A DNA stretch of 64,000 bases from Macrostomum hystrix (lineage: Eukaryota; Animalia; Platyhelminthes), in assembly GCA_950097015.1 (NCBI GenBank), contig CATNEN010000003.1, positions 7,998,001 to 8,062,000 of the forward strand. The letters are read 5' to 3'. A program made the translations under genes and the position numbers. Of the stretch, positions 6,461 to 64,000 are shown one piece after another. Under the pieces are notes generated by a model, which had not been told where the DNA came from, did no database searches, and worked only from the letters and a program-made list of their open reading frames with translations. How positions within the stretch are numbered: position 1 is the first letter of the stretch; each line of letters opens with the position of its first letter.

Positions 6461-7778
6461 AATTGTCAGTTGTCTGACAGTCCCGTCAGGCAGTTCGATG
6501 CAGCAGTTGGTGCTGGCTGGCTGCCACACGGCCGGCATGCTCTGATCATGACATTTTCTTTGGGCTTCAAGAGGGACAATGACTTTTCTGTACAGCCGGC
6601 TCTACCGACTATATACAGAACTGTTCTGAATCAGACAAAAACTGACTGATGTTGAAAAACATTTTTTGCTAAACTCTGCTTATGATATAGATGAAAGAGT
6701 AATGAACAATGTTATTATGCCATGCGTTCTAGGCTTCTGAAGATTATAAAATATCTCAATTTATAAATTTAGCTTGTGTCAAATTAAGAGTAAAATTACA
6801 CACCTCCATCGATTTCAAGAAGTCTGAAGTTCATGTACTTATCATTAGTCTGATTGTTTACGAACTTCCTGGGTAGTACAAACTGGGTCATCTGCAATCA
6901 AAATAATAAAAATATTATTTTATTGGAAAAGGCGCCAACAATGTACCAACATTGCACCAAGCAAATCAAACCTTTTCATAATTCCCATCCGTGCAGTTCA
7001 CTTTGTACTCGAAGCCCGGCTTCTCCGAGTAGCTGGTGTAGCCGCACAGGTGAAATCCGGTCACATTGTGAGTGAAGCTCGCTGTGCAGCCTGGCGGATT
7101 CTCAGTCAGACCGACCGGTTGCTGGTCGCTGAGCAGCACTTCAATGCCCTGGGCCCTGACTCTTTCACTGGCAGGAACTGGAGAAGAAGACACTATTACT
7201 TAAAAAATTCTACGTACAAAACTTTCAAAACGCAACCTAATTTGAAAGCTAATACAATTAAAAGCTGAATTATACTGGCACTGTGAGGTGGTGTCAATAG
7301 TTTGATAGGACATAGAAGACTCTACAAGAATAATTATGATCGAGTAGCTAAGAGGCTGAATCGAATTTGCCTTTTGCGCACCCTCCGGCCTCCGATAGAC
7401 AGTGACGGAGCGCACTCGGACACAGCGGCTCAGCTTCAGCAGCAGCCACTGGTAGCCCGAGCTGTCCGGAATGTCGCTGGAGTGAAAATAGTCTCCCAGG
7501 TCTGGCCGAGGAGTGGCGCAAGCAGAGACTGTCGCTCTCGAGCCAGGACGACTGCCAGGCGTCGGCGATTTCGGCTTTGGTGACGTTGAAGCCGCTGCCT
7601 GAAGAATGAGTAACAGCTGTGGATGCATTCACGCAATTTCGAAGATTTCGTAGCTGTTGCGAGCTACCGATGGATCAACAGCTCAAACTCAAAAGCAGCT
7701 CAAAACCTGAATGAAAATCTCACACCCAGAGAAGATGCAGATCATACAGCTGCAGGTTAGCATCAGCCTGAAATCCAT
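6461..7778 (-). pseudogene. Paralog C of the lectin-Ig receptor family: 5' exons only, frameshifted
   Basis: Signal exon MDFRLMLTCSCMICIFSG (ATG 7778). Lectin exon GSGFNVTKAEIADAWQ.../DYFHSSDIPDSSGYQWLLLKL is broken by a frameshift. Next come ERVRAQGIEVLLS...YKVNCTDG, then FVLPRKFVNNQTNDKYMNFRLLEIDG, then a frameshifted first Ig exon (CTEKSLSLLKPKENVMIRA..STNCCIELPDGTVRQL). No downstream exons found. Confidence 0.85.
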
Positions 7779-8314: not shown

Positions 8315-11300
8315 GAGATTTCATGGGATACAAGATCGAGAAATAATGGAATGCTAGAATGAGATTTCATGGGACACAAGATCGAGAATTAATGGAATTC
8401 TAGAATGAGATTTCATGGGATACAAGATCGAGAATTAATGGAATTCTAGAATGAGATTTTATGGGATTCTAGAATGGGGTTTCACGGTATTATAGACTGA
8501 GATTTTATGGGATTCTAGACTGAGATTTTATGGGATTCTAAAATGGAGTTTCATGATATTATAGACTGAGATTTTATGGGATTCTAGACTGAGATTTTAT
8601 GGGATTCTAGACTGAGATTTTATGGGATTCTAGAATGAGGTTTCACGGTATTATAAAATGGAGTTTCACGGTATTATAGAATGGAGTTTGACGGTGTTAT
8701 AGACTGAGATTTTATGGTATTCTAGAATGAGATTTTATGGGATTCTAGACTGAGATTTTATGGGATTCTAAAATGGGGTTTCACGGTATTATAGACTGAG
8801 ATTTTATGGGATTCTAGACTGAGATTTTATGGGATTCTAAAATGGGGTTTCACGGTATTATAGAATGAGATTTTATGGGATTCTAGACTGAGATTTTATG
8901 GGATTCTAGACTGAGATTTTATGGAATTCTAGAATGGGGTTTCACGGTATTATAGACTGAGATTTTATGGAATTCTAGAATGAGGTTTCACGGTATTTTA
9001 GAATGGAGTTTCACGGTATTATAGAATGGAGTTTCACGGTGTTATAGACTGAGATTTTATGGAATTCTAGAATGAGGTTTCACGGTATTATAGAACGGAG
9101 TTTCACGGTATTATAGAATGGAGTTTGACGGTGTTATAGACTGAGATTTTATGGGACTCTAGACTGAGATTTTATGGGATTCTAGACTGAGATTTTATGG
9201 GATTCTAGAATGGGGTTTCACGGTATTATAGAATGGAGTTTCACGGCATTATAGACTGAGATTTTATGGGATTCTAGAATGGGGTTTCACGGTATTATAG
9301 AATGGGGTTTCACGGTATTATAGACTGAGATTTTATGGGATTCTAGAATGGGGTTTCACGGTATTATAGACTGAGATTTTATGGGATTCTAGAATGGGGT
9401 TTCACGGTATTATAGAATGGGGTTTCACGGTATTATAGACTGAGATTTTATGGGATTCTAGAATGGGGTTTCACGGTATTATAGAATGGAGTTTCACGGC
9501 ATTATAGACTGAGATTTTATGGGATTCTAGAATGGAGTTTCACGGTATTATAGAATGGAGTTTCACGGTATTATAGACTGAGATTTTATGGGATTCTAGA
9601 ATGGGGTTTCACGGTATTATAGAATGGAGTTTCACGGTATTATAGAATGGAGTTTCACGGTATTATAGACTGAGATTTTATGGGATTCTAGAATGGGGTT
9701 TCACGGTATTATAGAATGGAGTTTCACGGTATTATAGACTGAGATTTTATGGGATTCTAGAATGGGGTTTCACGGTATTATAGAATGGAGTTTCACGGTA
9801 TTATAGAATGGAGTTTCACGGTATTATAGACTGAGATTTTATGGGATTCTAGAATGGGGTTTCACGGTATTATAGAATGGGGTTTCACGGTATTATAGAA
9901 TGGAGTTTCACGGTATTATAGACTGAGATTTTATGGGATTCTAGAATGGGGTTTCACGGTATTATAGAATGGAGTTTCACGGTATTATAGACTGAGATTT
10001 TATGGGATTCTAGAATGGGGTTTCACGGTATTATAGAATGGAGTTTCACGGTATTATAGACTGAGATTTTATGGGATTCTAGAATGGGGTTTCACGGTAT
10101 TATAGAATGGAGTTTCACGGTATTATAGAATGGAGTTTCACGGTATTATAGAATGGAGTTTCACGGTATTATAGAATGGGGTTTCACGGTATTATAGACT
10201 GAGATTTTATGGGATTCTAGAATGGAGTTTCACGGTATTATAGAATGGAGTTTCACGGTATTATAGACTGAGATTTTATGGGATTCTAGAATGGGGTTTC
10301 ACGGTATTATAGAATGGAGTTTCACGGTATTATAGACTGAGATTTTATGGGATTCTAGAATGGGGTTTCACGGTATTATAGAATGGGGTTTCACGGTATT
10401 ATAGAATGGGGTTTCACGGTATTATAGAATGGAGTTTCACGGTATTATAGAATGGAGTTTCACGGTATTATAGACTGAGATTTTATGGGATTCTAGAATG
10501 GGGTTTCACGGTATTATAGAATGGGGTTTCACGGTATTATAGAATGGAGTTTCACGGTATTATAGACTGAGATTTTATGGGATTCTAGAATGGGGTTTCA
10601 CGGTATTATAGAATGGAGTTTCACGGTATTATAGACTGAGATTTTATGGGATTCTAGAATGGGGTTTCACGGTATTATAGAATGGAGTTTCACGGTATTA
10701 TAGACTGAGATTTTATGGGATTCTAGAATGGGGTTTCACGGTATTATAGAATGGAGTTTCACGGTATTATAGAATGGAGTTTCACGGTATTATAGAATGG
10801 AGTTTCACGGTATTATAGAATGGGGTTTCACGGTATTATAGACTGAGATTTTATGGGATTCTAGAATGGGGTTTGACGGTATTATAGAATGGAGTTTCAC
10901 GGTATTATAGACTGAGATTTTATGGGATTCTAGAATGGAGTTTCACGGTATTATAGACTGAGATTTTATGGGATTCTAGAATGGGGTTTCACGGTATTAT
11001 AGAATGGAGTTTCACGGTATTATAGAATGGAGTTTCACGGTATTATAGAATGGAGTTTCACGGTATTATAGAATGGGGTTTCACGGTATTATAGACTGAG
11101 ATTTTATGGGATTCTAGAATGGGGTTTCACGGTATTATAGAATGGAGTTTCACGGTATTATAGAATGGAGTTTCACGGTATTATAGAATGGAGTTTCACG
11201 GTATTATAGAATGGGGTTTCACGGTATTATAGACTGAGATTTTATGGGATTCTAGAATGGAGTTTCACGGTATTATAGAATGGAGTTTCACGGTATTATA

Positions 11301-14300
11301 GACTGAGATTTTATGGGATTCTAGAATGGGGTTTCACGGTATTATAGAATGGAGTTTCACGGTATTATAGACTGAGATTTTATGGGATTCTAGAATGGGG
11401 TTTCACGGTATTATAGAATGGAGTTTCACGGTATTATAGACTGAGATTTTATGGGATTCTAGAATGGGGTTTCACGGTATTATAGAATGGAGTTTCACGG
11501 CATTATAGACTGAGATTTTATGGGATTCTAGAATGGAGTTTCACGGTATTATAGACTGAGATTTTATGGGATTCTAGAATGGAGTTTCACGGTATTATAG
11601 ACTGAGATTTTATGGGATTCTAGAATGGAGTTTCACGGTATTATAGACTGAGATTTTATGGGATTCTAGAATGGAGTTTCACGGTATATAGACTGAGATT
11701 TTATGGGATTCTAGAATGGAGTTTCACGGTATTATAGACTGAGATTTTATGGGATTCTAGAATGGGGTTTCACGGTATTATAGACTGAGATTTTATGGGA
11801 TTCTAGAATGGAGTTTCACGGTATTATAGACTGAGATTTATGGGATTCTAGAATGGAGTTTCACGGTATTATAGAATGGAGTTTCACGGCATTATAGACT
11901 GAGATTTTATGGGATTCTAGAATGGGGTTTCACGGTATTATAGACTGAGATTTTATGGGATTCTAGAATGGGGTTTTCACGGTATTATAGAATGGAGTTT
12001 CACGGCATTATAGACTGAGATTTTATGGGATTCTAGAATGGAGTTTCACGGTATTATAGACTGAGATTTTATGGGATTCTAGAATGGGGTTTCACGGTAT
12101 TATAGAATGGAGTTTCACGGTATTATAGAATGGAGTTTCACGGTATTATAGACTGAGATTTTATGGGATTCTAGAATGGGGTTTCACGGTATTATAGAAT
12201 GGGGTTTCACGGTATTATAGAATGGAGTTTCAACGGTATTATAGACTAAGATTTTATGGGATTCTAGAATGGGGTTTCACGGTATTATAGAATGGAGTTT
12301 CACGGTATTATAGACTGAGATTTTTCACGGTATTATAGAATGGAGTTTCACTGTATTATAGACTGAGACTTTATGGGATTCTAGAATGGGGTTGTTCACG
12401 GTATTATAGAATGGGGGTTTCACGGTCTTATAGAATGGAGTTTCACCGGTATTATAGGACTGAGATTTTATGGGATTCTAGAATGGGGGTTGCACGGTAT
12501 TATAGAATGGAGTTTCACGGTATATAGACTGAGATTTTATGGGAATTCTAGAATGGGGTTTCCACGGTATTTATAGAATGGGAGTTTCACGGTACTTATA
12601 GACTGAGATTTTATGGGATTCTAGAATGGGGGTTTCCGGTATTATAGAATGGAGTTTCACGGTATTATGCGAATGGAAGTTTCACGGTATTTATAGAATG
12701 GAGTTTCACGGTATTATAGAATGGGGTTTCAACGGTATTATAGACTGAGATTTTATGGATTCTAGAATGGAGTTTCACGGTATTATAGAATGGAGTTTCA
12801 CGGTATTATAGACTGAGATTTTATGGGATTCTAGAATGGGGTTTCACGGTATTATAGAATGGAGTTTCACGGTATTATAGACTGAGATTTTTATGGGATT
12901 CTAGAATGGGGTTTCACGGTATTATAGAATGGAGTTTCACGGTATTATAGACTGGGATTTACTGGGATTCTAGAATGGGGTTTCACGGTATTATAGAATG
13001 GAGTTTCACGGTATTATAGACTGAGATTTTATGGGATTCTAGAATGGGGTTTCACGGTATTATAGAATGAGATTTTCACGGGATTATAGAATGGAGTTTC
13101 ACGGTATTATAGACTGAGATTTATGGATTATGGGTTCACGGTATTATAGAATGGAGTTTCACGGTATTATAGACTGAGATTTTATGGGATTCTAGAATGG
13201 GGTTTCACGGTATTATAGACTGAGATTTTTATGGGATTCTAGAATGGGGTTTCACGGTATTATAGACTGAGATTTTATGGGATTCTAGAATGGGGTTTCA
13301 CGGTATTATAGACTGAGATTTTATGGGATTCTAGAATGGAGTTTCACGGTATTATAGACTGAGATTTTATGGGATTCTAGAATGGAGTTTCACGGTATTA
13401 TAGAATGGAGTTTCACGGCATTATAGACTGAGATTTTATGGGAATTCTAGAATGGGGTTTCACGGTATTATAGACTGAGATTTTATGGGATTCTAGAATG
13501 GGGTTTCACGGTATTATAGAATGGAGTTTCACGCATTATAGACTGAGATTTTATGGGATTCTAGAATGGAGTTTCACGGTATTATAGACTGAGATTTTAT
13601 GGGATTCTAGAATGGGGTTTCACGGTATTATAGAATGGAGTTTCACGGTATTATAGAATGGAGTTTCACGGTATTATAGACTGAGATTTTATGGGATTCT
13701 AGAATGGGGTTTCACGGTATTATAGAATGGGGTTTCACGGTATTATAGAATGGAGTTTCACGGTATTATAGACTGAGATTTTATGGGATTCTAGAATGGG
13801 GGTTTCACGGTATTATAGAATGGAGTTTCACGGTATTATAGACTGAGATTTTATGGGATTCTAGAATGGGGTTTCACGGTATTATAGAATGGAGTTTCAC
13901 GGTATTATAGACTGAGATTTTATGGGATTCTAGAATGGGGTTTCACGGTATTATAGAATGGAGTTTCACGGTATTATAGAATGGAGTTTTCACGGTATTA
14001 TAGAATGGAGGTTTCACGGTATTATAGAATGGAGTTTCACGGTATTATAGACTGAGATTTTATGGGATTCTAGAATGGAGTTTCACGGTATTATAGAATG
14101 GAGTTTCACGGTATTATAGACTGAGATTTTATGGGATTCTAGAATGGGGTTTCACGGTATTATAGACTGAGATTTTATGGGATTCTAGAATGGGGTTTCA
14201 CGGTATTATAGAATGGAGTTTCACGGTATTATAGAATGGAGTTTCACGGTATTATAGACTGAGATTTTATGGGATTCTAGAATGGGGTTTCACGGTATTA

Positions 14301-17300
14301 TAGAATGGAGTTTCACGGTATTATAGACTGAGATTTTATGGATTCTAGAATGGAGTTTCACGGTATTATAGACTGAGATTTTATGGGATTCTAGAATGGG
14401 GTTTCACGGTATTATAGAATGGAGTTTCACGGTATTATAGAATGGAGTTTCACGGTATTATAGAATGGAGTTTCACGGTATTATAGAATGGAGTTTTCAC
14501 GGTATTATAGACTGAGATTTTATGGGATTCTAGAATGGGGTTTCACGGTATTATAGAATGGAGTTTCACGGTATTATAGAATGGAGTTTCACGGTATTAT
14601 AGAATGGAGTTTCACGGTATTATAGAATGGGGTTTCACGGTATTATAGACTGAGATTTTATGGGATTCTAGAATGGAGTTTCACGGTATTATAGAATGGA
14701 GTTTCACGGTATTATAGACTGAGATTTTATGGGATTCTAGAATGGGGTTTCACGGTATTATAGAATGGAGTTTCACGGTATTATAGACTGAGATTTTATG
14801 GGATTCTAGAATGGGGTTTCACGGTATTATAGAATGGAGTTTCACGGTATTATAGACTGAGATTTTATGGGATTCTAGAATGGAGTTTCACGGTATTATA
14901 GACTGAGATTTTATGGGATTCTAGAATGGGGTTTCACGGTATTATAGAATGGAGTTTCACGGTATTATAGACTGAGATTTTATGGGATTCTAGAATGGGG
15001 TTTCACGATATTATAGAATGGAGTTTCACGGCATTATAGACTGAGATTTTATGGGATTCTAGAATGGAGTTTCACGGTATTATAGACTGAGATTTTATGG
15101 GATTCTAGAATGGGGTTTCACGGTATTATAGAATGGAGTTTCACGGCATTATAGACTGAGATTTTATGGGATTCTAGAATGGAGTTTCACGGTATTATAG
15201 AATGGAGTTTCACGGTATTATAGACTGAGATTTTATGGGATTCTAGAATGGGGTTTCACGGTATTATAGAATGGAGTTTCACGGTATTATAGACTGAGAT
15301 TTTATGGGATTCTATGGGGTTTCACGGTAATTATAGAATGGAGTTTCACGGTATTATAGACTGAGATTTTCATGGGATTATAGAATGGAGTTTCACGGTA
15401 TTATAGAAATGGAGTTTCACGGTATTATAGACTGAGATTTTATGGGATTCTAGAATGGAGTTTCACGGTATTATAGAATGGGAGTTTCACCGGTATTATT
15501 ATGACTGAGATTTTATGGGATTCTAGAATGGGTTTCACGGTATTATAGAATGGAGTTTCACGGTATTATAGACTGAGATTTTATGGGATTTCTAGAATGG
15601 GGTTCACGGTATATAGAATGGAGTTTCACGGTATTATAGCCTGAGATTTTAGGGATTCTAGAATGGGGTTTCACGGTATTATAGAATGGAGTTCACGGTA
15701 TTATAGAATGGAGTTTCACGGTATTATAGACTGAGATTTTATGGGATTCTAGAATGGGGGTTTCACGGATATTATAGAATCTGGAAGAGTTTAAGGGGAT
15801 TCTAGAATGAGATTTTCACTGTATTATAGAATGGAGTTTCACGGTATTATAGACTGAGATTTATGGGATTCTAGAATGGGGTTTCACGGTATTATAGAAG
15901 GGAGTTTCACGGTATTATAGACTGAGATTTTATGGGATTCTAGAATGGGGTTTCACGGTATTATAGAATGGAGTTTCACGGTATTATAGACTGAGATTTT
16001 ATGGGATTCTAGAATGGAGTTTCACGGTATTATAGACTGAGATTTTATGGGATTCTAGAATGGGGTTTCACGGTATTATAGAATGGAGTTTCACGGTATT
16101 ATAGACTGAGATTTTATGGGATTCTAGAATGGGGTTTCACGGTATTATAGAATGGAGTTTCACGGTATTATAGACTGAGATTTTATGGGATTCTAGAATG
16201 GGGTTTCACGGTATTATAGAATGGAGTTTCACGGTATTATAGACTGAGATTTTATGGGATTCTAGAATGGGGTTTCACGGTATTATAGAATGGAGTTTCA
16301 CGGTATTATAGACTGAGATTTTATGGGATTCTAGAATGGGGTTTCACGGTATTATAGAATGGAGTTTCACGGTATTATAGAATGGAGTTTCACGGTATTA
16401 TAGAATGGAGTTTCACGGTATTATAGAATGGGGTTTCACGGTATTATAGACTGAGATTTTATGGGATTCTAGAATGGAGTTTCACGGTATTATAGAATGG
16501 AGTTTCACGGTATTATAGACTGAGATTTTATGGGATTCTAGAATGGGGTTTCACGGTATTATAGAATGGAGTTTCACGGTATTATAGACTGAGATTTTAT
16601 GGGATTCTAGAATGGAGTTTCACGGTATTATAGACTGAGATTTTATGGGATTCTAGAATGGAGTTTCACGGTATTATAGACTGAGATTTTATGGGATTCT
16701 AGAATGGAGTTTCACGGTATTATAGACTGAGATTTTATGGGATTCTAGAATGGGGTTTCACGGTATTATAGAATGGAGTTTCACGGTATTATAGACTGAG
16801 ATTTTATGGGATTCTAGAATGGGGTTTCACGATATTATAGAATGGAGTTTCACGGCATTATAGACTGAGATTTTATGGGATTCTAGAATGGAGTTTCACG
16901 GTATTATAGACTGAGATTTTATGGGATTCTAGAATGGGGTTTCACGGTATTATAGAATGGAGTTTCACGGTATTATAGACTGAGATTTTATGGGATTCTA
17001 GAATGGGGTTTCACGGTATTATAGAATGGAGTTTCACGGCATTATAGACTGAGATTTTATGGGATTCTAGAATGGAGTTTCACGGTATTATAGACTGAGA
17101 TTTTATGGGATTCTAGAATGGAGTTTCACGGTATTATAGAATGGAGTTTCACGGCATTATAGACTGAGATTTTATGGGATTCTAGAATGGGGTTTCACGG
17201 CATTATAGACTGAGATTTTATGGCATTCTAGAATGGAGTTTCACGGCATTATAGACTGAGATTTTATGGGATTCTAGAATGGGGTTTCACGGTATTATAG

Positions 17301-17525
17301 AATGGAGTTTCACGGTATTATAGACTGAGATTTTATGGGATTCTAGAATGGGGTTTCATGAGATTATAGATTCAGGTTTCACGGGATTATAGAATGAGAT
17401 TTCACGGGACTCTAGGATCAGGTTTAATGGGATTCTACAATGAGATTTCATGGGATTATAGAATGAGAAGCAATAGAATTCTAGAATGAGGTTTCATGGG
17501 ATTATAGAATGAGGTTTCATGGAAC
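8315..17525 (+). repeat. ~9.2-kb satellite of two interleaved 23-bp monomers (~400 units)
   Basis: Monomer A is TAGACTGAGATTTTATGGGATTC; monomer B is TAGAATGG(G/A)GTTTCACGGTATTA. Degenerate intermediate monomers occur at both edges. Confidence 0.97.
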
Positions 17526-17990: not shown

Positions 17991-18165
17991 ACATCACAGC
18001 ATCTTAATTCAGCTGTGGCTAAATCGGATTTCTAAAAGTGCGCGCGCCAAACTGAACCATCCCCACCTCAACTCCCCTGCAACCTGAAGGTCACTCAGCA
18101 ATCGCGTGCGCCATCTGAATGAGCTTCAACCGCTTTCTCTTGATCATCGAGACACACTATAGGCC

Positions 18166-19154
18166 GATCGATCAACTGTCAGCAAGTTCTTGTCCATAAA
18201 GCACAGTCGATCGATCAACTGTCAGCAAGTTCTTGTCCATAAAGCACAGTCGATCGATCAACTGTCAGCAAGTTCTTGTCCATAAAGCACAGTCGATCGA
18301 TCAACTGTCAGCAAGTTCTTGTCCATAAAGCACAGTCGATCGATCAACTGTCAGCAAGTTCTTGTCCATAAAGCACAGTCGATCGATCAACTGTCAGCAA
18401 GTTCTTGTCCATAAAGCACAGTCGATCGATCAACTGTCAGCAAGTTCTTGTCCATAAAGCACAGTCGATCGATCAACTGTCAGCAAGTTCTTGTCCATAA
18501 AGCACAGTCGATCGATCAACTGTCAGCAAGTTCTTGTCCATAAAGCACAGTCGATCGATCAACTGTCAGCAAGTTCTTGTCCATAAAGCACAGTCGATCG
18601 ATCAACTGTCAGCAAGTTCTTGTCCATAAAGCACAGTCGATCGATCAACTGTCAGCAAGTTCTTGTCCATAAAGCACAGTCGATCGATCAACTGTCAGCA
18701 AGTTCTTGTCCATAAAGCACAGTCGATCGATCAACTGTCAGCAAGTTCTTGTCCATAAAGCACAGTCGCTCGATCAACTGTCAGCAAGTTCTTGTCCATA
18801 AAGCACAGCCGATCGATCAACTGTCAGCAAGTTCTTGTCCATAAAGCACAGTCGATCGATCAACTGTCAGCAAGTTCTTGTCCATAAAGCACAGTCGATC
18901 GATCAACTGTCAGCAAGTTCTTGTCCATAAAGCACAGTCGATCGATCAACTGTCAGCAAGTTCTTGTCCATAAAGCACAGTCGATCGATCAACTGTCAGC
19001 AAGTTCTTGTCCATAAAGCACAGTCGATCGATCAACTGTCAGCAAGTTCTTGTCCATAAAGCACAGTCGATCGATCAACTGTCAGCAAGTTCTTGTCCAT
19101 AAAGCACAGTCGATCGATCAACTGTCAGCAAGTTCTTGTCCATAAAGCACAGTC
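18166..19154 (+). repeat. 43-bp minisatellite, 23 near-perfect copies
   Basis: Unit GATCGATCAACTGTCAGCAAGTTCTTGTCCATAAAGCACAGTC; 989 bp = 23 x 43. Only two substitutions seen (~18769, ~18809). No spacers. Confidence 0.97.
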
Positions 19155-19299
19155 GCTGCCACCAACGCTTGATCCACCTCGCTTTGAAGTCCAGAGTCCT
19201 AGCTCTAATCGCGATGCTGATATTCTGAGAGAAGCCTGTATCATCGATGAAATAGGGTTGAGCTGGCTTGAAGCCCAATTTTGAGTCGCAGTTTAAAGG

Positions 19300-19520: not shown

Positions 19521-21097
19521 TTTTTATTCCAACACAAGCTACAATGAACCCTCGCTCCCCTGCCAACCACTCTGTGGTTCTCTGAGCGAATCAGCTAATG
19601 CTGGGTGACTAATCCAGCCGCTCGGGTTCTGTCGGTAGGATTAATATAATCACCGAGAGGCATCTAACAGACCGTAACCCCCTAACACACCTGCGAATTG
19701 TCTTTAATCCACAGAGCATTCCTAATTATCCGACCCGATCGGGAATAGCACCCGCCTGCCTTGTGCCATTGTGCCAGGGAGTAGAGTGCCTTCATCTGCT
19801 GTCGCTGCCTGTACAATAGTATCTGCTCAACTTCAAAGCAGAATTGCTGGAGTCCTTGAAGTCCTTGAGTTCGGGAGTCCTGAAATTGTAAGCGAAATTG
19901 ATCCAAGCACGTGCAGCACATGCCAGTCGTATACGAACTTAGGGCATTGGTAAACCAATTTTATCTCTGCATCTCTTCTAAAGGCTACAACAAAAGCTAC
20001 GGCATTTTTACAACAACAGGAACTCTAATATTATTCACAACTAGTACCAGCATTTAAACTGCCAAGCTGCTGTGCCCATGTTTACATGTTGATTGTGCAC
20101 TCGCTGATTGAATATGCATAGGAAATTGCACATCCGTGATTAAATTCAGACACGAGTGTCGGAAAGTGTTCTTGCCTCATTAGATCAGAATTAGAAGAAG
20201 CTGCTATAAATTGATCGCATTTTATTAATTCAGTTCTTGTCAGCACCAACTGTAAAGGGAACTTGTATCTTGCTAAGTTTTGCCGTGTGCCGTTCTGAAA
20301 TAGAAATTCTACAGGTAAATATTATATACCAAGACTGCCATTCCAAAGCTGATAAGAAATGAGGAGTTCATTGGAGCAAATTTAGAAATGGAACACACTC
20401 CAGCGATGTTTAGAACAAACGCTTTAACAAAACTCTCCAATGAGACCTTCGCCTGAATATTTAGCATGCAGGTTTTATATAAGCTGAGCCAGATCTGGGA
20501 TAGTTGTACACCTAAATATGATATTCATACAAACACTTTATAAATACAGTCTGGGCTCCATCAGGAGTAAAGCTTCGTTAGCGCCAGTGTTTATGGCCAA
20601 GCGATAAATATTAAGCATACAAGACGGACGCTCGCTTTGGTACTGAATAAATAGGACAAGCGAAAATTGCCAAATTGAGGCTAATAGGAGTCGGTAACAA
20701 ACTGCACCCATTAAATTAGTAACGAAATGACTACATTTATAAGTAAATCAAATCAAGTTTAGGTCTTTGCTTAACTGGAGTATGGAAACCTTAGTGAAGC
20801 AGTCGCTGATTCTCAAATTGATAAAATGGATGCTTAATAGAGCTGATAAAATCGAATCTGTGCATATTGCTCTGGAATAAAAACAGGCGCAGGTTACAGT
20901 CATTTCCGTTTTGATCTTTCACAGACATTGCTGCTTCTAATCAGACTTATGTAGACAAGCTGATTCGTGTGGCAGTTCTTCGAATTCAATGCTATCACAG
21001 GATTAGCATCGAAAATTGGTAGGCAGAACTCGATAGCTATTAACGCTATCCCTAAATTAGTTTCCTCAAATCAACATCCTCTCAACTCTTTGAAGTG

Positions 21098-24000
21098 TCA
21101 AGCCGTCACCAGGTGGCCTTCCTCATCCAGGTGGCCAACAATTGGCAGGTAGAGAGTCTCCCAGCTGTCCGAGAGGCCGGGCACCGAGCCCACAACGGTG
21201 GCGTATTCCGTGTTGCCCAAGTTCTGCGGGTAAAAATGCAGGATGTGGCGCGAAGATGAGGAACATGATGCAGTTGCTGACGGAGAAGCTATTCGGTTGC
21301 AAAGTTTAAGAAGCCTGTGGATTCTTCATTGCATCATTCTTCAAGTGCAAAATGAAAGATTGCATTACATTCACTTTATAAACGCCTGTATTTTACTAGA
21401 CTTTGCAAAACATCATTTTTTCTTCGAGTTTCACAGAAGGGCGTTTACGAGCTCATAGTGACGATAAAAATATTACCTGGTACAGATAGTGCGACTTTCT
21501 AAACTCCAACTCGAGCTCCAGGGATGAACGGCGCTCTTCGTTTCTGGTTTTAGAGGCCGCAGCCGAGGTGGCCATCGATAGCTGAACCGAGTTTAGTCTG
21601 CGGCGATGCAGCCAAACAGGCACTGCGAGGATGAGCAGCAGCGGCAGCAGAATCAGCGGGGACAACAGAGGCCACATGGACCTCTGTGGCTCATGGTTAG
21701 GCGTGGCGATCAGCTGAGGCATTTCAGCTGAGGTTTTCATGAGAATGAATATGCTTCACTTTTCCATATGTTTCACCAAATCCATTAATAAATTGTTCGT
21801 AATGTAATGATGTTCATTTGTTATACCTATTTCTGCTTTTTCCTGATGTGAGGCTATCATGCGTAGTTCAAGATAAGCTGTGAATACTTGAGCCTTTGCT
21901 TGCTTCACATATAAAAGATGCTTAATGCTGCACCTAAGCTTGTAGCCTTCTACTGATTCGCAACTCCTCCCCATTCCTCACAATGTCCCATCGCATATAA
22001 TGTGCAGGCCCTCACCACTCACTGACAGGGCCATCGAGCCTAATGAAAATTAAGAACTTCAACAAAAGTCAAGCCCCCTATCTACTGATAATAGTTTGTG
22101 ACATCATGTCTGTCAAAGTTTATTGAATCATCCAACGCATGGTATCGTGCTTTGAGCAGAGCCTTAAAAACTTGCTCACTGGTGGAATTCAGCGTCCAAT
22201 TGTAGGTCTCCGAGAAATTCTGCCCACCTACTTGAGTCACAATGCAGGAGATTTCAATGAAAGGAATTTGCTCATGATGAACAAATGCTAATGCGTGAGT
22301 CGCATTGCCAAGCAGAACCGAACGGTTTGAGATTTCGCTTCTAAAGATCTGGAATCAAAATGGTTTCAGGCATCGAATCAACTACTGTACTCAAATAGCG
22401 AGATAGAGGAACAATTTTAGGCCTCATGAAACGTTCGCGTACTGATGATGAAGAATTGCCATTGACAAAGCACTCAGCCTCCGGCATGGGGTTTCCACCT
22501 GACAGACGCAGGGTGCCATCAAAGTGGGTTCCATTGAAGCTCGGCTCGGACAGCGTCACGTTTGGCTTGTCTAAAATCAGTTTTGAATTTGATTTCTTAG
22601 AGCAACTTCTTCAGCCACATGCGAGTTGGGTCGTTTTAAATCGCTTAAAACCATCAGCTTACAGTAAACAATGAGAGTCAAACTCCTCCAATCCGACAAA
22701 GCTTTGTCCTGCCTGAATATGCACCTGAGTATCTTCTCATGGTGCACTCTCGAGGCTTGAAGCCAGAAATTCTTCATCATTGTCGATTTCTCCGTCACAT
22801 TTCTGGTCTGTGTAGGAAAGCAGACGAATGAGCTAGTCACAAAAGAACCAGTTGATGAAGATAACAAGCAAGGTACGTACATGAAATTTACTCTTAGACA
22901 GTCTCAGATCTCCTAGAAAGCACTCGAGTTCGCTGACTGTTGGTCTGCCACCAGCTGACTCGAGCGTGACGTTCAGGATGTTGCCTTCAGCGATCTCGGA
23001 ACTTGGACTTATCAGCAGAGAATTGTTGGCCATGTCTGGAATCAGATGATCAGCACTCAGCTGTCTGGCATGCTTATAACAAAATTCAATCAGAAGCAGA
23101 GAGAACACAGTGAGTTTGGTCTCACAGTTCACTTGAAAGACCACTGCGGTGCTGCTGTTGAACACGGTCTGTGAGTTTAGAACTTGCTCAGCTGAGCACT
23201 GAATGGTGCTGCTCTGTCTATGCGGATGGAAACTCACTTCTGTTGTAACTCTATTTGACACGACTTTGCTTGATAGCTGACTCTGAAATATTGCCAGTTT
23301 TATGATAAAGAGAACAGTTTATGCTGTGTTCAAATAACTTTTTTCTTGAAAGAGTAAATGAAAATCAGCTCACAATCAGGCCGTGGTCAGCGCTGCATTT
23401 GTGAGTCACTTTCGGATTCCCGTCACCCGATGTGACGGAGAAGATTTTGGTAACGTTTTCGTAGATGTCGGATGTCTGCAAGCCGGTGATTTCTGGTTTG
23501 GGAGGCTGGTCTGAGGAGTCAGGATTCGATCATCAATTGATTTTAAAATGTAAAGGGCATCCAGTAGGTAAAAGTGTTTAAGATTCTTAACATTCTTTAA
23601 GGAGGTCCTCATGAACTCACAGAATACATTGACACTCTGATTGAAGTTGCTCAGCAGATCTGCCGCACTGCCCTGACTCACTCTGCACATCACAGAGACT
23701 CCGTTCATTTGTCTGCTGGACGTCGAGCTGAAGTTGGTGACGAGTTCCAGCTGTGGAATATCCTGAGTGCGCGGAGAAGTCGCATTTCTCGCATGCGTCA
23801 CATTCATGCGGATGTTTTGACTGCCAGCCACCTGCAGCCAGCACTCATGACTGGGTGCAGGATTCCCACCGACTGACGTCACAGAGACTGAGATGGCCTC
23901 GCCCTCTTTCACATCCAGGGGCTGAGTTGCCGACCATGAGTTATTTGATGCATCTGTGCATGAGTAACAGTTTTAGAATCAATTTCAGATTTGATTGTAG

Positions 24001-31631: not shown

Positions 31632-34600
31632 TCACTCTTCATAGTAGTAGACAGTCTGCAATAAAAAAGAGTTCGGTCATAAATAATTACAAAAAATGTT
31701 TTTTTAATTGCAATGACTACTTATAGTAGTTGACTAACATTCGGATCGGCGGGATTCGAAACTTCAGCAGGTCGTCTCGCTAGCATCTCAACAGCCTCAC
31801 ATTGGCTGGTGGCGGCCGGTCGCTTCCGCCTCAGCACAATGGCGGCCACCGAGGCTCCGACTGCAGCAGCTGCGACCAGCGAGCAGCTGAGTGTCACGAT
31901 TGGCAACGCTGCGCCACTGCTGACTGCCGGTGTCTGTCTGGAACTCGCTGAAGCAAAATATGCCAGAGTGAAGTTCAGTCAGAGCTCAGGTAATTGTCTA
32001 CAAAGACCTAAATTCTTTGTCCATCTACTGCTATTCAGTCATCAGCGGCTCACGGAAGACGGCCCGAAAGGTGGTTGAGCTCCTTGCGGGGCTGAACAGA
32101 GTTCCGAGACCAGGCCAGCTCTGGTTTATCAGACACGTGACCGTGACCTCCGCCTGCGGCTCCATGAACCAATGGGACAGCCGAGCACTACGAATCCAGC
32201 CTCCGCTTCTGCCTCTGGTGTCGGGCTCCGGAGTCAGCTGCTCAGAGGATAGAAGTGCGACGAGAGTTTCTTTCGAGACAATGGTGTGAGTTATGCCTCT
32301 AACTCAAAGACTCAAATGACTCAAGTGAAAAGATCCCTCACTGTCAGGCCTTCAATGCTGACTGAGTCGGACCTCAGAGAGCAGCGCAGCTCCGGCTTCG
32401 GGTTTCCCTCCAGCGTCCTCCCAATGAGACTGAGCTCAGAGCCGTTCAGCAGCTGGCCGGACCAGCCGATGCTGTTTGAGGCGACTGCGGGACGGTTTGA
32501 GGGATGAGCAGTCAAGACTCTCAAGTGTCGTTCTGTAATTAGGGCTCTGAATATCCTCTGAAGTTCTATGCAAGAAACTCCACATTCATGTTACCTATCT
32601 CATTAAATGTAACAAGGACTCACAGAAAACCTGAACACTTTGTTGAAAGCGCTTCGGAAATTCCTTCACAGCTGTCTGATAGACAACGCACATCAGGGAG
32701 CCGTTGTTCATTCGCCTTGCTGATGGCACGCTGAAGTTGGTCTCCAGCTCCCTGTCCAAGTTCTTGCGCAGAGTTTCAGCTGTCAAGTTGATCACGAGAC
32801 TATCTGCTGATATCACCCAGCACCAGTGGCCAGTGGGCTCAGGGTTGCCACCGACTGACCTCACTGAGACAGCCAAAGGCTCGCCTTCCCTCACGAGCAG
32901 CGGCTGATTGGCACTCCACGAGCAGTTTGACAGATCTTTTTTGGGGAACAAAAAATGGATAAGACTGCACCTTGTCCTTTTAGTTTAGGTTTGGATGCGC
33001 TCATTTGAGATGAACTTACGCAGCACATTCAGCGCCTCGCTGATTACAGATAAATAAAAAACTGTTGCATCTTTTCCAGTGGACTGTATCACATGGCAGT
33101 TGATGCTCATTCCGTCGTCGCCAGCGATGGCATCGAGTATCCACGTCGATGAGGCATCGAGGGCAGTTGGAGGCTGAAGTTTGAGTTGTTTTGGCATCAC
33201 TAAATAGAATTGCACTGAATGCTGCATTTGCTGCAGACTCACTTTGATTTGTGATAAAGTTCTTCCCGCAACGGAGCAGATGTGCTGAGCAGGCGGATTC
33301 CCAATGTCCGATGCAGCGAGCTCAAACTGAACTGCCGATCCACTTTGGATTGGTCCATCGGGCAATCGGATCGATGCGTTGCGAACCGGGACTGCAATTC
33401 AAGAGTCTGGGCTGAAAACTGAAGGGCTTTTGACAGTGTCAGTATGCTTGATTCACTTGAAGATGGAAGGTGAGAACCTAATTGACTTTCAATAGTGTTC
33501 GTGGGTGCATGAAAGTTTTAGCGAAAAATTGAATTTGGTCTAATTTCTAACACATCAACTCGCCATGAAGGTAGAATATGTGTGGACGAGGTAATTTTCG
33601 CTGGGCTGGCATTGTAGCATCATGTGAGTTATAATATTTTATTTAAACTCTTGAGCTTTTCTAATGCATTTCGTGCTAGATTTACCGCTTTGGGTGTCAG
33701 CGGTCCTTCTCAGTTTACTGATTTTCATGACTCGACCAATTCTTAATAAACATGGTCAATTCGGAATGGAATTTCTATTTTTATTAGTCAAATTGTCGCT
33801 TGTAAACTGCAAATTGTTGGAAACCATCTATAAATATCTGATAAAGTAACAGGTGTGGAAATGAACCATCGCCTTTATGCTCATAGCAGCAAGCCAGCAA
33901 AATCCACGGCAAGTTAATTACAAAAGCAGATCCTACTGCATTCTATTTTTGTCGTGTCAATCGAACAACGTCTATTATTGTTTGATATGCCGATCTGAAG
34001 CGGATGTAGTTTTGCTTGGCAGAAATGGCTCGCATTTACCAAAGTGCAGCAATTTCTAGATTCAGTGAATGCCGAGATCAAATTTGCAGTCAAATGCTAA
34101 AGTTGGCCCTTGAAGCCTGAGAATAAGTGGTGTACGTACTCAACTCTAAATGATGAAGCGATTCCAAAACAACGAAAGAAAAGCTATTATTGGCGCAAGC
34201 TTTCAAACAGACTCTAAAGACCTTGTTCCGTCTTCTCAGTTGATGCTTTGTGACGCTCTGCTTTCATAATTTCAGAAATAACATCGACTAAATGGAAAGT
34301 ATTTTCATAAAGCTGCTTGCAACCCAACCTTCAATTTTCTATAATTCTAGCAAAAATACATCAGCCAGCGTTTTGCAAGACATGGAGAACTTCAGGACAA
34401 AAGTGCTTAAATCGCTTAAAACCATCAGCTTACAGTAAACAATGAGAGTCAAATTCCTCCATTCCGTCAGAACTTTGTCCTGCTCGAATTTGCACCTGAG
34501 TATCTTCTCATGGTGCACCCTCGAGGCTTGAAGCCAGAAATTCTTCATCATTATCGATTTCTCCGTCACATTTCTGGTCTGTAGGAAAGCAGACGAATGA

Positions 34601-61146: not shown

Positions 61147-62280
61147 AGGATGTAACTGTTTGTGATGAGGATGTAGCTGTTTGTTATGAGGATGTAACTG
61201 TTTGTTATGAGGATGTAACCTTTTGTCATGAGGATGTAACTGTTTGTTATGAGGATGTAGCTGTTTGTTATGAGGATGTAGCTGTTTGTTATGAGGATGT
61301 AGCTGTTTGTTATGAGGATGTAATTGTTTGTTATGAGGATGTAGCTGTTTGTTATGAGGATGTAATTGTTTGTTATGAGGATGTAGCTGTTTGTTATGAG
61401 GATGTAACTGTTTGTCATGAGGATGTAACTGTTTGTTATGAGGATGTAGCTGTTTGTTATGAGGATGTAACTGTTTGTTATGAGGATGTAACCTTTTGTC
61501 ATGAGGATGTAACTGTTTGTTATGAGGATGTAGCTGTTTGTTATGAGGATGTAGCTGTTTGTTATGAGGATGTAGCTGTTTGTTATGAGGATGTAATTGT
61601 TTGTTATGAGGATGTAGCTGTTTGTTATGAGGATGTAACTGTTTGTTATGAGGATGTAACCTTTTGTCATGAGGATGTAACTGTTTGTTATGAGGATGTA
61701 GCTGTTTGTTATGAGGATGTAGCTGTTTGTTATGAGGATGTAGCTGTTTGTTATGAGGATGTAGCTGTTTGTTATGAGGATGTTGCTGTTTGTTATGAGG
61801 ATGTAACTGTTTGTTATGAGGATGTAGCTGTTTGTTATGAGGATGTAACTGTTTGTTATGAGGATGTAGCTGTTTGTGATGAGGATGTAGCTGTTTGTTA
61901 TGAGGATGTAACTGTTTGTTATGAGGATGTAGCTGTTTGTTATGAGGATGTAACTGTTTGTCATGAGGATGTAGCTGTTTGTCATGAGGATGTAGCTGTT
62001 TGTTATGAGGATGTAGCTGTTTGTTATGAGGATGTAACTGTTTGTTATGAGGATGTAGCTGTTTGTTATGAGGATGTAGCTGTTTGTTATGAGGATGTAA
62101 CTGTTTGTTATGAGGATGTAGCTGTTTGTTATGAGGATGTAGCTGTTTGTTATGAGGATGTAGCTGTTTGTTATGAGGATGTAGCTGTTTGTTATGAGGA
62201 TGTAGCTGTTTGTTATGAGGATGTAGCTGTTTGTTATGAGGATGTAATTGTTTGTCATGAGGATGTAATTGTTTGTGATG
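61147..62280 (+). repeat. 21-bp intronic minisatellite (~54 copies)
   Basis: Unit GAGGATGTA(G/A)CTGTTTGTTAT. Lies in the SLC4 intron about 55 nt from the acceptor at 61091. Confidence 0.96.
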
Positions 62281-64000
62281 ACGGTTCGGTTTCTTTAGCT
62301 AAGATGAAATTTAGATTTGTGTGTCATTGCTTTCGATTGAAATTTCAATTCAATAAATACAGTAGAGGCTGAGCTATTTCTAGACTTTAACAAATCAAAT
62401 TCCGTGCTAAGCCTGGGGCTTTGGTTAATCTACTTAGGTTACATGCACTTCCACTGAGTGCTCAGTTCGGAAACTGTCTCCCAAGTGCAAAAGCCATTAG
62501 ACACGCTTTTTTTCGACCCCATGATATGAGACCGAAACCTCCTATAATATATATGTTTAGTCCACTTCGCGAGGGCTGCACTACAGTGTAGGAGGGGGAG
62601 TAGAAAAAATTAGGTTACAGTCGCTATGCGGATGAAATCTCGCATGTGCATGCATGTCCTACTGGTCACTCTAAACTTAGAGGCTGGGCCTTGTGTGTGG
62701 GCGGAATGCCGCATCATCGCTTGCGCCCGCCAACCCTGGGGACAGGCTTCAGCGCGACACTCTTGAGATGGCACTCGTCTCCATCGAGCAAATCATCTTC
62801 CTCATCCGTGTATAAGGAGGACAAATTTCCTGCACCCCCACGACATGTAGGACACAGGACACATAGTTCATCGGTCCCGCAATCTCGTTGTGGACTATAG
62901 CAACTACTGGCTGCACGAGATGACAACTGAATAATTTGAATGCTAATTGCGAAAGAAAGGCATTAAGCATGGTGGCCACCAAGCTTGCAGAATTTCTGAT
63001 CCATTTCCAATGCCTCCACAGCAGTTCCACCAAACTGTATAGAGAACGAAGTCATCACAATCTCACTTGGCTGACAGAAATGACTGAATCACTGGCTCAT
63101 GTACTGATACAAACATATACAGACGCAAACTGTAGAACAGTTACTGACTAATTCTCTGTTTTACGATTGGGAATACTTTCTTTAAGCGTGGAAGAAATCG
63201 TTCAAGAGTACCCATCACTAAAAAGTGCTCGTGTACTTTTGGCTCTCAAGAATTCTACACCAGAAGTAGGTTTAGGACATCCTGTGCAATACAGAAAACT
63301 TCAACCGCACTTTTCTGATCTCCTTCTGCACATGTACTCTTTTAGCCAATTCAAGTTGCCTTGTTCCAGTCTCTCCTTTTAAATCCCATCTTTATTTCTC
63401 ATTGCTAGCTGTCGATTTCGATCCGACCCCTTGTGTGCTACTAAGTTTTCCGTTCAAACGCAATGGCTCTAGCAGACGGGGCAAGGAATTGGGCTACATT
63501 TTTAAACTAGAAGATTCTGGAAGGAAACAGACGAGGTTAAATTGTTTCGATTCCAAAAGTGAAAATAATTTGTTAAAATAAATATAGAAGCATGTCTGAT
63601 TGGTTGCTTCATGATAAATAGACGAAAAGAAAATGAAGATCAATTAATTATTCGCAAATGAAGTTTTCTAAAATTCGTTGAAAAACACGATTTGCGAGAT
63701 ATAGTAGAAGAAAAGCATTGATGTGAAAGAATGTGAAAAACGTGTAAATTTCCTATCCCGCTAGTGCATTTTTCTGTGAAAATCAGCCTTTAATAAAATT
63801 TTTCTAAGAAACGAAGTGTTCCGTCCTTCTTCCTCTTGTGGTCCTTGTGCCTGACGATGAGAAAAACAGGGCAGATGTACACACCTCACTGGCTACGGGT
63901 CTACCGTCACAAAATGATGTACCAGTACCTTCTGCAGCTATTATTATTATTTTTATAAATGAAATCGATTTAATACACTTAAGATTTACAATCATCCAAT

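What the first reader, a model, noticed from the sequence alone, without database searches (positions are those of the whole stretch)
21098..21727. Receptor A tail has two ITSM-type motifs and a splice-created YQNL motif
Seen: the tail reads ...RRSSL..SHYLYQ|NLGNTEYATVVG...ETLYLPIVG. TEYATV and TLYLPI both fit the ITSM consensus TxYxxV/I, and TEYATV differs by one residue from the PD-1 ITSM TEYATI. YQNL (YxxL, also a YxN Grb2-type site) forms only across the last splice junction, so intron retention (giving YQVIFLSSL*) would remove all three motifs. Inference: recruitment of a tandem-SH2 phosphatase (SHP-2/Corkscrew type). The last exon is missing from the ORF track.
Basis: partly seen in the sequence, partly recalled or inferred. 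Interest (0 to 1): 0.82.

Follow-up and report, generated by a model that had tools for sequence, protein, structure and literature searches.

The report
Flatworm lectin receptor two-tyrosine tail
A flatworm cell-surface receptor gene ends in a short, conserved tail with two tyrosine motifs like those that switch off vertebrate immune receptors, and the genome also encodes the matching phosphatase, but neither the splicing nor any binding has been tested.

Summary
On the minus strand, a membrane-spanning exon (21727-21477) ends ...HYLYQ at a GT donor. After a 253-base intron, a 41-codon last exon (21223-21098) reads NLGNTEYATVVG...ETLYLPIVGHLDEEGHLVTA*.

This is not chance. The same module occurs in 11 genes of one lectin-headed receptor family in this genome, which earlier scan notes call a Macrostomum-type flatworm (not human). 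Both tyrosines are invariant, and the exon is under purifying selection (dN/dS about 0.28, dS above 1). The intron keeps its position and phase in three diverged lineages. One sub-family encodes the same tail with no intron.

Only the second motif is a conserved ITSM match (T.Y..I, extended to IVGH). The first keeps Y..VV, but its -2 residue varies (T/M/V/D). YQNL occurs only in the three near-identical A-type copies, so it is probably incidental.

The genome encodes an SHP-2 orthologue with two SH2 domains and a phosphatase domain. Phosphatase recruitment is therefore possible, but it remains an inference. Tyrosine-based sorting signals or other SH2 partners fit as well.

I could not reach any transcript or any other species. 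The scan has already noted this receptor family, with tyrosine-motif tails, on other DNA of the same genome.

The parts
21477..21727 (-). Penultimate exon of receptor A: juxtamembrane stretch, transmembrane helix and the first 44 cytoplasmic residues, ending HYLYQ
   Evidence: The acceptor cag|CT at 21728/21727 is in phase with a GTGAGC donor at 22179. The region is collinear with paralogue L029.
21609..21677 (-). Transmembrane helix MWPLLSPLILLPLLLILAVPVWL, followed by the HRRR stop-transfer signal (21608-21597)
   Evidence: The positive-inside rule puts the downstream residues in the cytoplasm.
21477..21491 (-). HYLYQ at the exon end. It is HYLYK in C7:598k and HNLFT in C31:750k, so these tyrosines are not family-wide.
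21224..21476 (-). Phase-0 GT-AG intron of 253 nt. If retained it reads VIFLSSL* and removes the last exon.
   Evidence: The intron has the same position and phase in C7:598k (267 nt) and C31:750k (about 2 kb).
21098..21223 (-). Terminal coding exon: 41 codons plus the TGA stop at 21100-21098
   Evidence: It is conserved in 11 loci, with dN/dS about 0.28 and dS above 1.
21194..21211 (-). Motif 1, TEYATV. The family-invariant core is Y..VV. The -2 residue varies (T/M/V/D).
21125..21160 (-). Motif 2, ETLYLPIVGHLD. The family-invariant core is T.Y..IVGH, a conserved ITSM-consensus match with an extension.

Best explanation
Receptor A is a single-pass membrane protein of a flatworm lectin-headed receptor family. 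Its mRNA most likely joins the membrane exon (to 21477) to a 41-codon last exon (from 21223).

That exon encodes a conserved two-tyrosine module: Y..VV, then 18-27 residues, then T.Y..IVGH[LI][DN]. Acidic and serine residues precede each tyrosine.

The most likely mechanism is as follows. On ligand engagement a cytoplasmic tyrosine kinase phosphorylates both tyrosines. The doubly phosphorylated tail then docks a protein with two SH2 domains. The leading candidate is the genome's SHP-2/Corkscrew orthologue, with its N-SH2 on motif 1 and its C-SH2 on motif 2, as in PD-1. This would both localise the phosphatase and release its auto-inhibition.

Shown here: the sequence, the conservation, the selection, the conserved intron and the presence of the phosphatase. 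Inferred: splicing in RNA, phosphorylation and the identity of the partner.

YQNL at the junction is a recent, lineage-specific feature and probably not part of the mechanism.
For: - **Sequence and topology:**
- **Distribution:** a profile of the tail hits only 11 loci in 220 Mb. All three lineages I checked by fetching about 10 kb (C7:598k, C31:750k and one C2 gene) lie in genes with the same lectin head; C7:598k has fully collinear exons, the other two share the head and only some or none of the other exons.
- **Invariant residues across five diverged lineages:** Y, V+3 and V+4 of motif 1; L..S; and T-2, Y, I+3, V, G, H of motif 2.
- **Selection:** dN/dS is 0.28 against C7:598k and C31:750k, with dS of 1.2-1.7.
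- **Intron:** position and phase 0 are conserved in three lineages.
- **Intron-less paralogues:** the C2/C31:782k sub-family encodes membrane helix plus the same module in one exon. This shows the module is a cytoplasmic tail.
- **Candidate partner:** C1:10614977-10616623 is one 549-aa open frame with 2 x SH2 plus a PTP domain. It matches human PTPN11 end to end at E = 2e-107. The FLxR arginine and the following His are kept in both SH2 domains, and the HCSAGIGRTG and WPD catalytic motifs are intact.
- **Fit to published binding rules:** bivalent parallel binding, and a preference for a medium non-polar residue at pY+1, are described for PD-1/BTLA and SHP1/2 (PMC8631942). Motif 1 has A, L or V at +1.
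Against: - No RNA evidence for the junction could be reached.
- No relative of the tail was found in 1.84 billion representative proteins or in three word searches. Cross-species conservation is therefore untested.
- Motif 1 is not a conserved ITIM or ITSM at -2.
- Motif 2 has E or T at +1 in some paralogues.
- The extension IVGH[LI]D is not part of any known SHP-2 motif and could point to another partner.
- Both motifs also fit the Y..hydrophobic sorting signal.
- The tyrosine spacing of 18 residues in A is shorter than the roughly 23-25 I recall for PD-1, BTLA and PECAM-1 (from memory, not checked here).
- No AATAAA-type signal lies within 500 nt after the stop.
Confidence: 0.4

Rival explanations
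1. The two tyrosines are unphosphorylated Y-x-x-hydrophobic sorting signals. Clathrin adaptor mu subunits would read them and drive endocytosis or lysosomal/basolateral sorting of a lectin-type uptake receptor.
For: YATV, YLPI, YEVI, YLTI, YTDI and YLQV all fit Y..[VI]. A lectin head suits a cargo or clearance receptor. Such signals are common in short tails (general knowledge).
Against: Sorting signals constrain mainly Y and +3. Here T at -2 and V, G, H at +4 to +6 are invariant although dS is above 1. Two copies at a kept spacing are not needed for adaptor binding.
Confidence: 0.2
2. The module is a phosphotyrosine docking site, but for another reader: a Src/Csk/Abl-type kinase SH2, the Syk-like tandem-SH2 kinase, a small SH2 adaptor or a PTB protein. 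The tail could then activate rather than inhibit.
For: At least 83 SH2-encoding stretches are present, including SH3-SH2, Abl-like and a second tandem-SH2 open frame at C7:10.95 Mb. The invariant IVGH[LI]D extension is not explained by known SHP-2 preferences.
Against: The Tyr-Tyr spacing of 18-27 does not fit the ITAM rule of about 10-12 residues needed by Syk-type tandem SH2 domains. From general knowledge, a threonine or hydrophobic residue at -2 together with V/I at +3 is the hallmark of SHP/SAP-type readers.
Confidence: 0.25
3. The last exon is not used in copy A, or A is a decaying copy. In that case the motifs have no function at this locus.
For: The copies are mosaic. Homology of A to C7:538k starts only at about 22100. 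C7:588k has a 1-bp insertion in the membrane exon, a roughly 350-bp deletion upstream, and a stop in the nearest upstream lectin-head exon (C7:583.7k), which I take to be its own. There is no transcript evidence and no poly(A) signal near the stop.
Against: In A both exons are open and the splice sites are canonical. All changes in the last exon that separate the three young copies are either synonymous or fall in the one variable residue G/S/R. A's ectodomain exons are collinear with an intact paralogue.
Confidence: 0.1

Closest known systems
Vertebrate ITIM/ITSM pairs of inhibitory receptors (PD-1 VDYGEL/TEYATI, BTLA, PECAM-1, CD33-type Siglecs)
   Same: It is a type I membrane receptor with two tyrosine motifs in a short tail. 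The distal motif fits T.Y..[VI]. TEYATV is one residue from the PD-1 ITSM. Motif 1 has a medium non-polar residue at +1, as published for SHP docking. A tandem-SH2 phosphatase is present.
   Different: There is no sequence homology to those tails, so the resemblance is probably convergent. The proximal motif has no fixed -2 residue. Spacing is 18-27 residues. The distal motif carries an invariant IVGH[LI]D extension that I do not know from vertebrate tails (general knowledge, not searched here). The ectodomain starts with a fucose-lectin-like / F5/8-C-like head rather than a V-set Ig domain (weak Pfam hit only). Binding is untested.
SLAM-family ITSMs read by SAP/EAT-2
   Same: The T.Y..[VI] consensus is met, with the T at -2 invariant in motif 2.
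   Different: I did not look for a SAP-like single-SH2 adaptor. The 'switch' behaviour that defines an ITSM cannot be inferred from sequence.
Invertebrate multigene receptor families with ITIM-like tails, e.g. Botryllus allorecognition receptors (PMC12582321, listed) and Hydractinia Alr genes (from memory)
   Same: It is a tandemly arrayed, fast-diverging family of single-pass receptors with tyrosine motifs in the tail. At least 45 lectin-head hits were found here.
   Different: The phylum, domain set and tail sequence all differ. No allorecognition or immune phenotype is known. I did not read that paper beyond its listing.
Tyrosine-based Y-x-x-hydrophobic sorting signals
   Same: Both motifs match.
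   Different: Conservation extends from -2 to +8, beyond what such signals need.

Membership tests
ITSM (T-x-Y-x-x-V/I) | Consensus match in the cytoplasmic tail of a membrane receptor | tested here: met
   TEYATV and TLYLPI lie after the membrane helix plus HRRR. Motif 2 matches in all 11 paralogues.
ITSM (T-x-Y-x-x-V/I) | Consensus residues kept among relatives | tested here: inconclusive
   Motif 2 is fully kept (TLY..I, TVY..I, TIY..I). Motif 1 keeps Y and V, but its -2 residue is T, M, V or D. No other species could be examined.
ITSM (T-x-Y-x-x-V/I) | Phosphorylated tyrosine binds SAP/EAT-2 and SHP-2/SHP-1/SHIP SH2 domains (switch behaviour) | not testable with these tools
   This needs phosphopeptide binding or cell assays.
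ITSM (T-x-Y-x-x-V/I) | A tandem-SH2 phosphatase exists in the organism | tested here: met
   A 549-aa open frame at C1:10614977-10616623 has 2 x SH2 plus a PTP domain and matches PTPN11 at E = 2e-107. A second tandem-SH2 plus PTP locus lies on C11.
ITIM ([S/I/V/L]-x-Y-x-x-[I/V/L]) | Consensus match | tested here: not met
   In A neither motif has S/I/V/L at -2; both have T. Only the C31:750k paralogue has VEYATV.
ITAM (Y-x-x-L/I, 6-12 residues, Y-x-x-L/I) | Spacing between the two tyrosine motifs | tested here: not met
   Tyr-to-Tyr distance is 18 (A), 21 (C7:598k, C31:750k) or 27 (C2 type) residues. Motif 1 also has V at +3.
Grb2-type pY-x-N site (YQNL) | Motif present and kept among relatives | tested here: not met
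   It is present only in the three copies that are 95-97% identical. C7:598k has YK|ER and C31:750k has LFT|ST at the same junction.
Y-x-x-hydrophobic sorting signal | Consensus match in a cytoplasmic tail | tested here: met
   YATV and YLPI match. The function is not testable here.

The most novel reading that the evidence does not exclude
The lectin-headed receptor family of Macrostomum has independently evolved a bivalent SHP-2-recruiting inhibitory tail. This would make it a Siglec-like glycan-sensing checkpoint system in a flatworm, the first inhibitory immunoreceptor-type signalling module shown in Platyhelminthes. Its docking motif (T.Y..IVGH[LI]D) is longer than the vertebrate ITSM.
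Probability: 0.25. Interest if true: 0.7.

Novelty: new member of a known kind. Interest (0 to 1): 0.4.

Why it matters
If the tail really docks the SHP-2 orthologue, paired ITIM/ITSM-type inhibitory signalling would not be a vertebrate or deuterostome speciality. It would have arisen again on a different receptor scaffold in a flatworm that can be manipulated by RNAi. That would give a simple model for how glycan-sensing receptors restrain cell responses. The conserved extension of the motif could also reveal how SH2 specificity evolves.

If the tyrosines are only sorting signals, the finding is an ordinary feature of an otherwise undescribed receptor family.

Tried and rejected
- **Profile of the last exon against 1.84 billion representative proteins.** Only two repetitive proteins matched (P0001, P0002); judging by their sequences they are probably bacterial and unrelated. 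No relative was found.
- **Word searches.** I searched the membrane exon, the natural 322-aa open frame of the C7:598k paralogue (tail region only) and the single-exon tail of the C2 type. Nothing was found. The length window of that tool excludes full-length receptors, so this says little.
- **Pfam on ten exon-level open frames.** The only signal was a weak F5/8-type-C hit on the head exon. No Ig family matched.
- **AlphaFold2 on one Ig-like-looking exon with a five-row alignment.** Mean pLDDT was 44, which is unusable. I ran no fold search and make no claim of my own about Ig domains.
- **Shuffle test on the whole tail.** I dropped the step and used only a per-residue background count.
- All searches were done exon by exon.
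- **Literature.** I found no paper on ITIM/ITSM receptors in flatworms or on this Macrostomum family.
- **Rejected readings.** ITAM is rejected on spacing. YQNL as a conserved Grb2 site is rejected because it is not conserved. A chance match is rejected because of paralogue conservation.

Full report
**What is there.** The window is eukaryotic. Earlier notes of this scan on the same assembly call it a Macrostomum-type flatworm. It is not human, and nothing here needed to be withheld on that ground.

On the minus strand:
- An exon runs from 21727 to 21477. It encodes a membrane helix (MWPLLSPLILLPLLLILAVPVWL, 21677-21609), a stop-transfer HRRR and 40 further cytoplasmic residues ending ...LELELEFRKSHYLYQ.
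- A GTAATA donor follows at 21476.
- After 253 bases, a pyrimidine-rich acceptor (...TTTTTACCCGCAG) precedes the last exon at 21223.
- That exon reads NLGNTEYATVVGSVPGLSDSWETLYLPIVGHLDEEGHLVTA, with the stop at 21100-21098.

This includes the retained-intron product YQVIFLSSL* and the absence of the last exon from an ORF list. The PD-1 ITSM is indeed TEYATI (PMC10901852).

**Is it more than chance?** T.Y..[VI] occurs at 1.3e-4 per residue in the window's open frames. Two matches in 41 residues are therefore unexpected for a single exon, although a few such pairs would occur somewhere in a whole proteome.

The stronger evidence is comparative. Searching the whole 220-Mb assembly with the exon, and then with profiles, finds the module in only 11 places:
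- three near-identical A-type copies (this one, C7:538k and C7:588k);
- C7:598k;
- C31:750k;
- C31:782k;
- five genes of an array on C2.

The three lineages I checked by fetching about 10 kb all belong to genes with the same lectin-like head. C7:598k also has collinear ectodomain exons throughout. The head alone has at least 45 hits in the genome, so the module marks one part of a large family.

Across the five diverged lineages the invariant residues are:
- Y, V(+3) and V(+4) of the first motif;
- L..S between the motifs;
- T(-2), Y, I(+3), V, G, H of the second motif.

Nei-Gojobori estimates for the exon give dN/dS of about 0.28 against C7:598k and C31:750k, with dS of 1.2-1.7. The residues have therefore been held while silent sites were nearly randomised. 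Among the three young copies, the changes in this exon are synonymous or fall in the one variable residue (G/S/R).

**Is the exon spliced in?** I could reach no transcript. I left out every step that needs the joined sequence, both protein searches and junction-spanning DNA strings.

The indirect evidence is good:
- The splice sites are canonical.
- The intron lies at the same codon boundary (phase 0) after ...H.L[YF]. in A, C7:598k (267 nt) and C31:750k (about 2 kb).
- In the C2/C31:782k sub-family the membrane helix and the same module lie in one uninterrupted exon. This shows directly that the module is the end of a cytoplasmic tail.

Against this, there is no AATAAA-like signal within 500 nt of the stop.

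- *Motif 2* (TLYLPI; TVYEVI, TIYLTI and TLYTDI in paralogues) is a conserved match to T.Y..[VI].
- *Motif 1* is TEYATV only in the A lineage. It is MEYATV, VEYATV (an ITIM match) or DVYLQV elsewhere. What is conserved is Y..VV, not an ITSM.
- *YQNL* is not conserved. C7:598k has YK|ER and C31:750k has LFT|ST at the same junction. It is a feature of three copies that are 95-97% identical and has no comparative support.
- *ITAM* is excluded, because the tyrosines are 18, 21 or 27 residues apart.

**Can the proposed effector exist?** Yes. SH2 and PTP domain hits coincide at C1:10.615 Mb. One 549-aa open frame there has two SH2 domains and a phosphatase domain. It aligns end to end with human SHP-2 at E = 2e-107. 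The phosphotyrosine-binding FLxR arginine and the following histidine are kept in both SH2 domains, as are the catalytic HCSAGIGRTG and WPD motifs. Both SH2 domains also keep glycine at the αA2 position, which in SHP-2, from memory, is what opens the pocket for the -2 residue. A second tandem-SH2 plus PTP locus lies on C11. SH3-SH2, Abl-like and Syk-like SH2 proteins are also present.

For PD-1 and BTLA, published work shows bivalent parallel binding (N-SH2 on the proximal motif, C-SH2 on the distal ITSM) and a preference for A/V/L/I at pY+1 (PMC8631942). The flatworm module fits this pattern at motif 1 (A, L or V at +1) and partly at motif 2.

**Best reading and rivals.** I read the exon as a real, selected, two-tyrosine docking module. 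The SHP-2 orthologue is the leading candidate partner (confidence 0.4).

The constraint from -2 to about +8 argues against a mere Y..hydrophobic sorting signal (0.2). It equally leaves room for a different SH2 or PTB reader (0.25), because IVGH[LI]D is not part of any known SHP-2 preference. A non-functional copy is unlikely but not excluded (0.1). The copies are mosaic, and C7:588k carries a frameshift in the membrane exon and a deletion upstream; the lectin-head exon just upstream of it (C7:583.7k) also contains a stop.

**Comparison and novelty.** The tail works like, or at least looks like, the ITIM/ITSM pairs of vertebrate inhibitory receptors. It shares no ancestry with them that I can detect. 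I found no relatives of the tail outside this genome and no paper on such receptors in flatworms.

I could not confirm the Ig nature of the stalk. Pfam was silent and the AlphaFold2 model was poor.

The scan has already noted this family and its tyrosine-motif tails on other pieces of the same genome (s1-306165, s1-408116, s1-332678, s1-278211, s1-306123). One of those notes reports Tyr-to-Phe replacements in relatives of another sub-family. In the 11 copies of the present module both tyrosines are invariant.

I class the finding as a new member of a known kind, of moderate interest. Binding data could raise that.

Noticed in passing
L008:1225-1491 (G000:C7 about 597.9-598.2k): The homologous intron of the C7:598k paralogue is a 267-nt TCC/TCA-type microsatellite. 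It stays open in frame, so retaining it would insert a serine-rich stretch without removing the tyrosine motifs. This is unlike copy A, where retention ends the protein.
   Followed up: partly
window 20800-22100 versus G000:C7:537.7-538.8k and C7:587.5-588.7k: The tail cassette (from about 22100 to beyond the stop) is 95-97% identical at three loci, while the sequence upstream differs. C7:538k switches to another exon at about 22100, and C7:588k has a roughly 350-bp deletion. This looks like duplication or conversion of the tail cassette alone. C7:588k also has a 1-bp insertion that shifts the frame in the cytoplasmic part of the membrane exon.
   Followed up: partly
window 31724-31978 (-): The membrane exon of neighbouring receptor B has no charged residue in its helix. 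Its tail has no copy of the A-type module, because the profile search hits only A in this window. The B-type exon end ...DPNVS is shared with a C7 paralogue (L051 around 7420).
   Followed up: no
window 7380-7605 (-): Two overlapping lectin-head matches lie in different frames (77% and 65% identity to A's head exon). This is probably a frameshifted relic of a third family member.
   Followed up: no
window 8443-17519: A 9-kb satellite with a 23/46/69-bp period (about 130 copies of the 69-mer), with very strong GC skew (+0.5) and 36% GC.
   Followed up: no
window 18165-19155 and 61147-62281: Two young tandem arrays: a 43-bp unit x 23 copies (99% identical) and a 21-bp unit x 54 copies (94% identical).
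   Followed up: no
L027 (G000:C1:10614300-10617300) and L043 (G000:C11:6340500-6348200): The SHP-2 orthologue on C1 is a single intron-less 549-aa open frame. A second locus on C11 has a tandem-SH2 exon and a PTP exon about 5 kb apart, with long open frames (up to 1,352 aa) between them.
   Followed up: partly
G000:C2:552k-640k: A tandem array with a spacing of about 12-13 kb holds at least five nearly identical genes (identical tails). They have a lectin head and a single-exon membrane helix plus a roughly 200-aa tail ending ...DVYLQVV...TLYTDIVGHIDTDGR.... This may be the cluster described in note s1-332678.
   Followed up: partly
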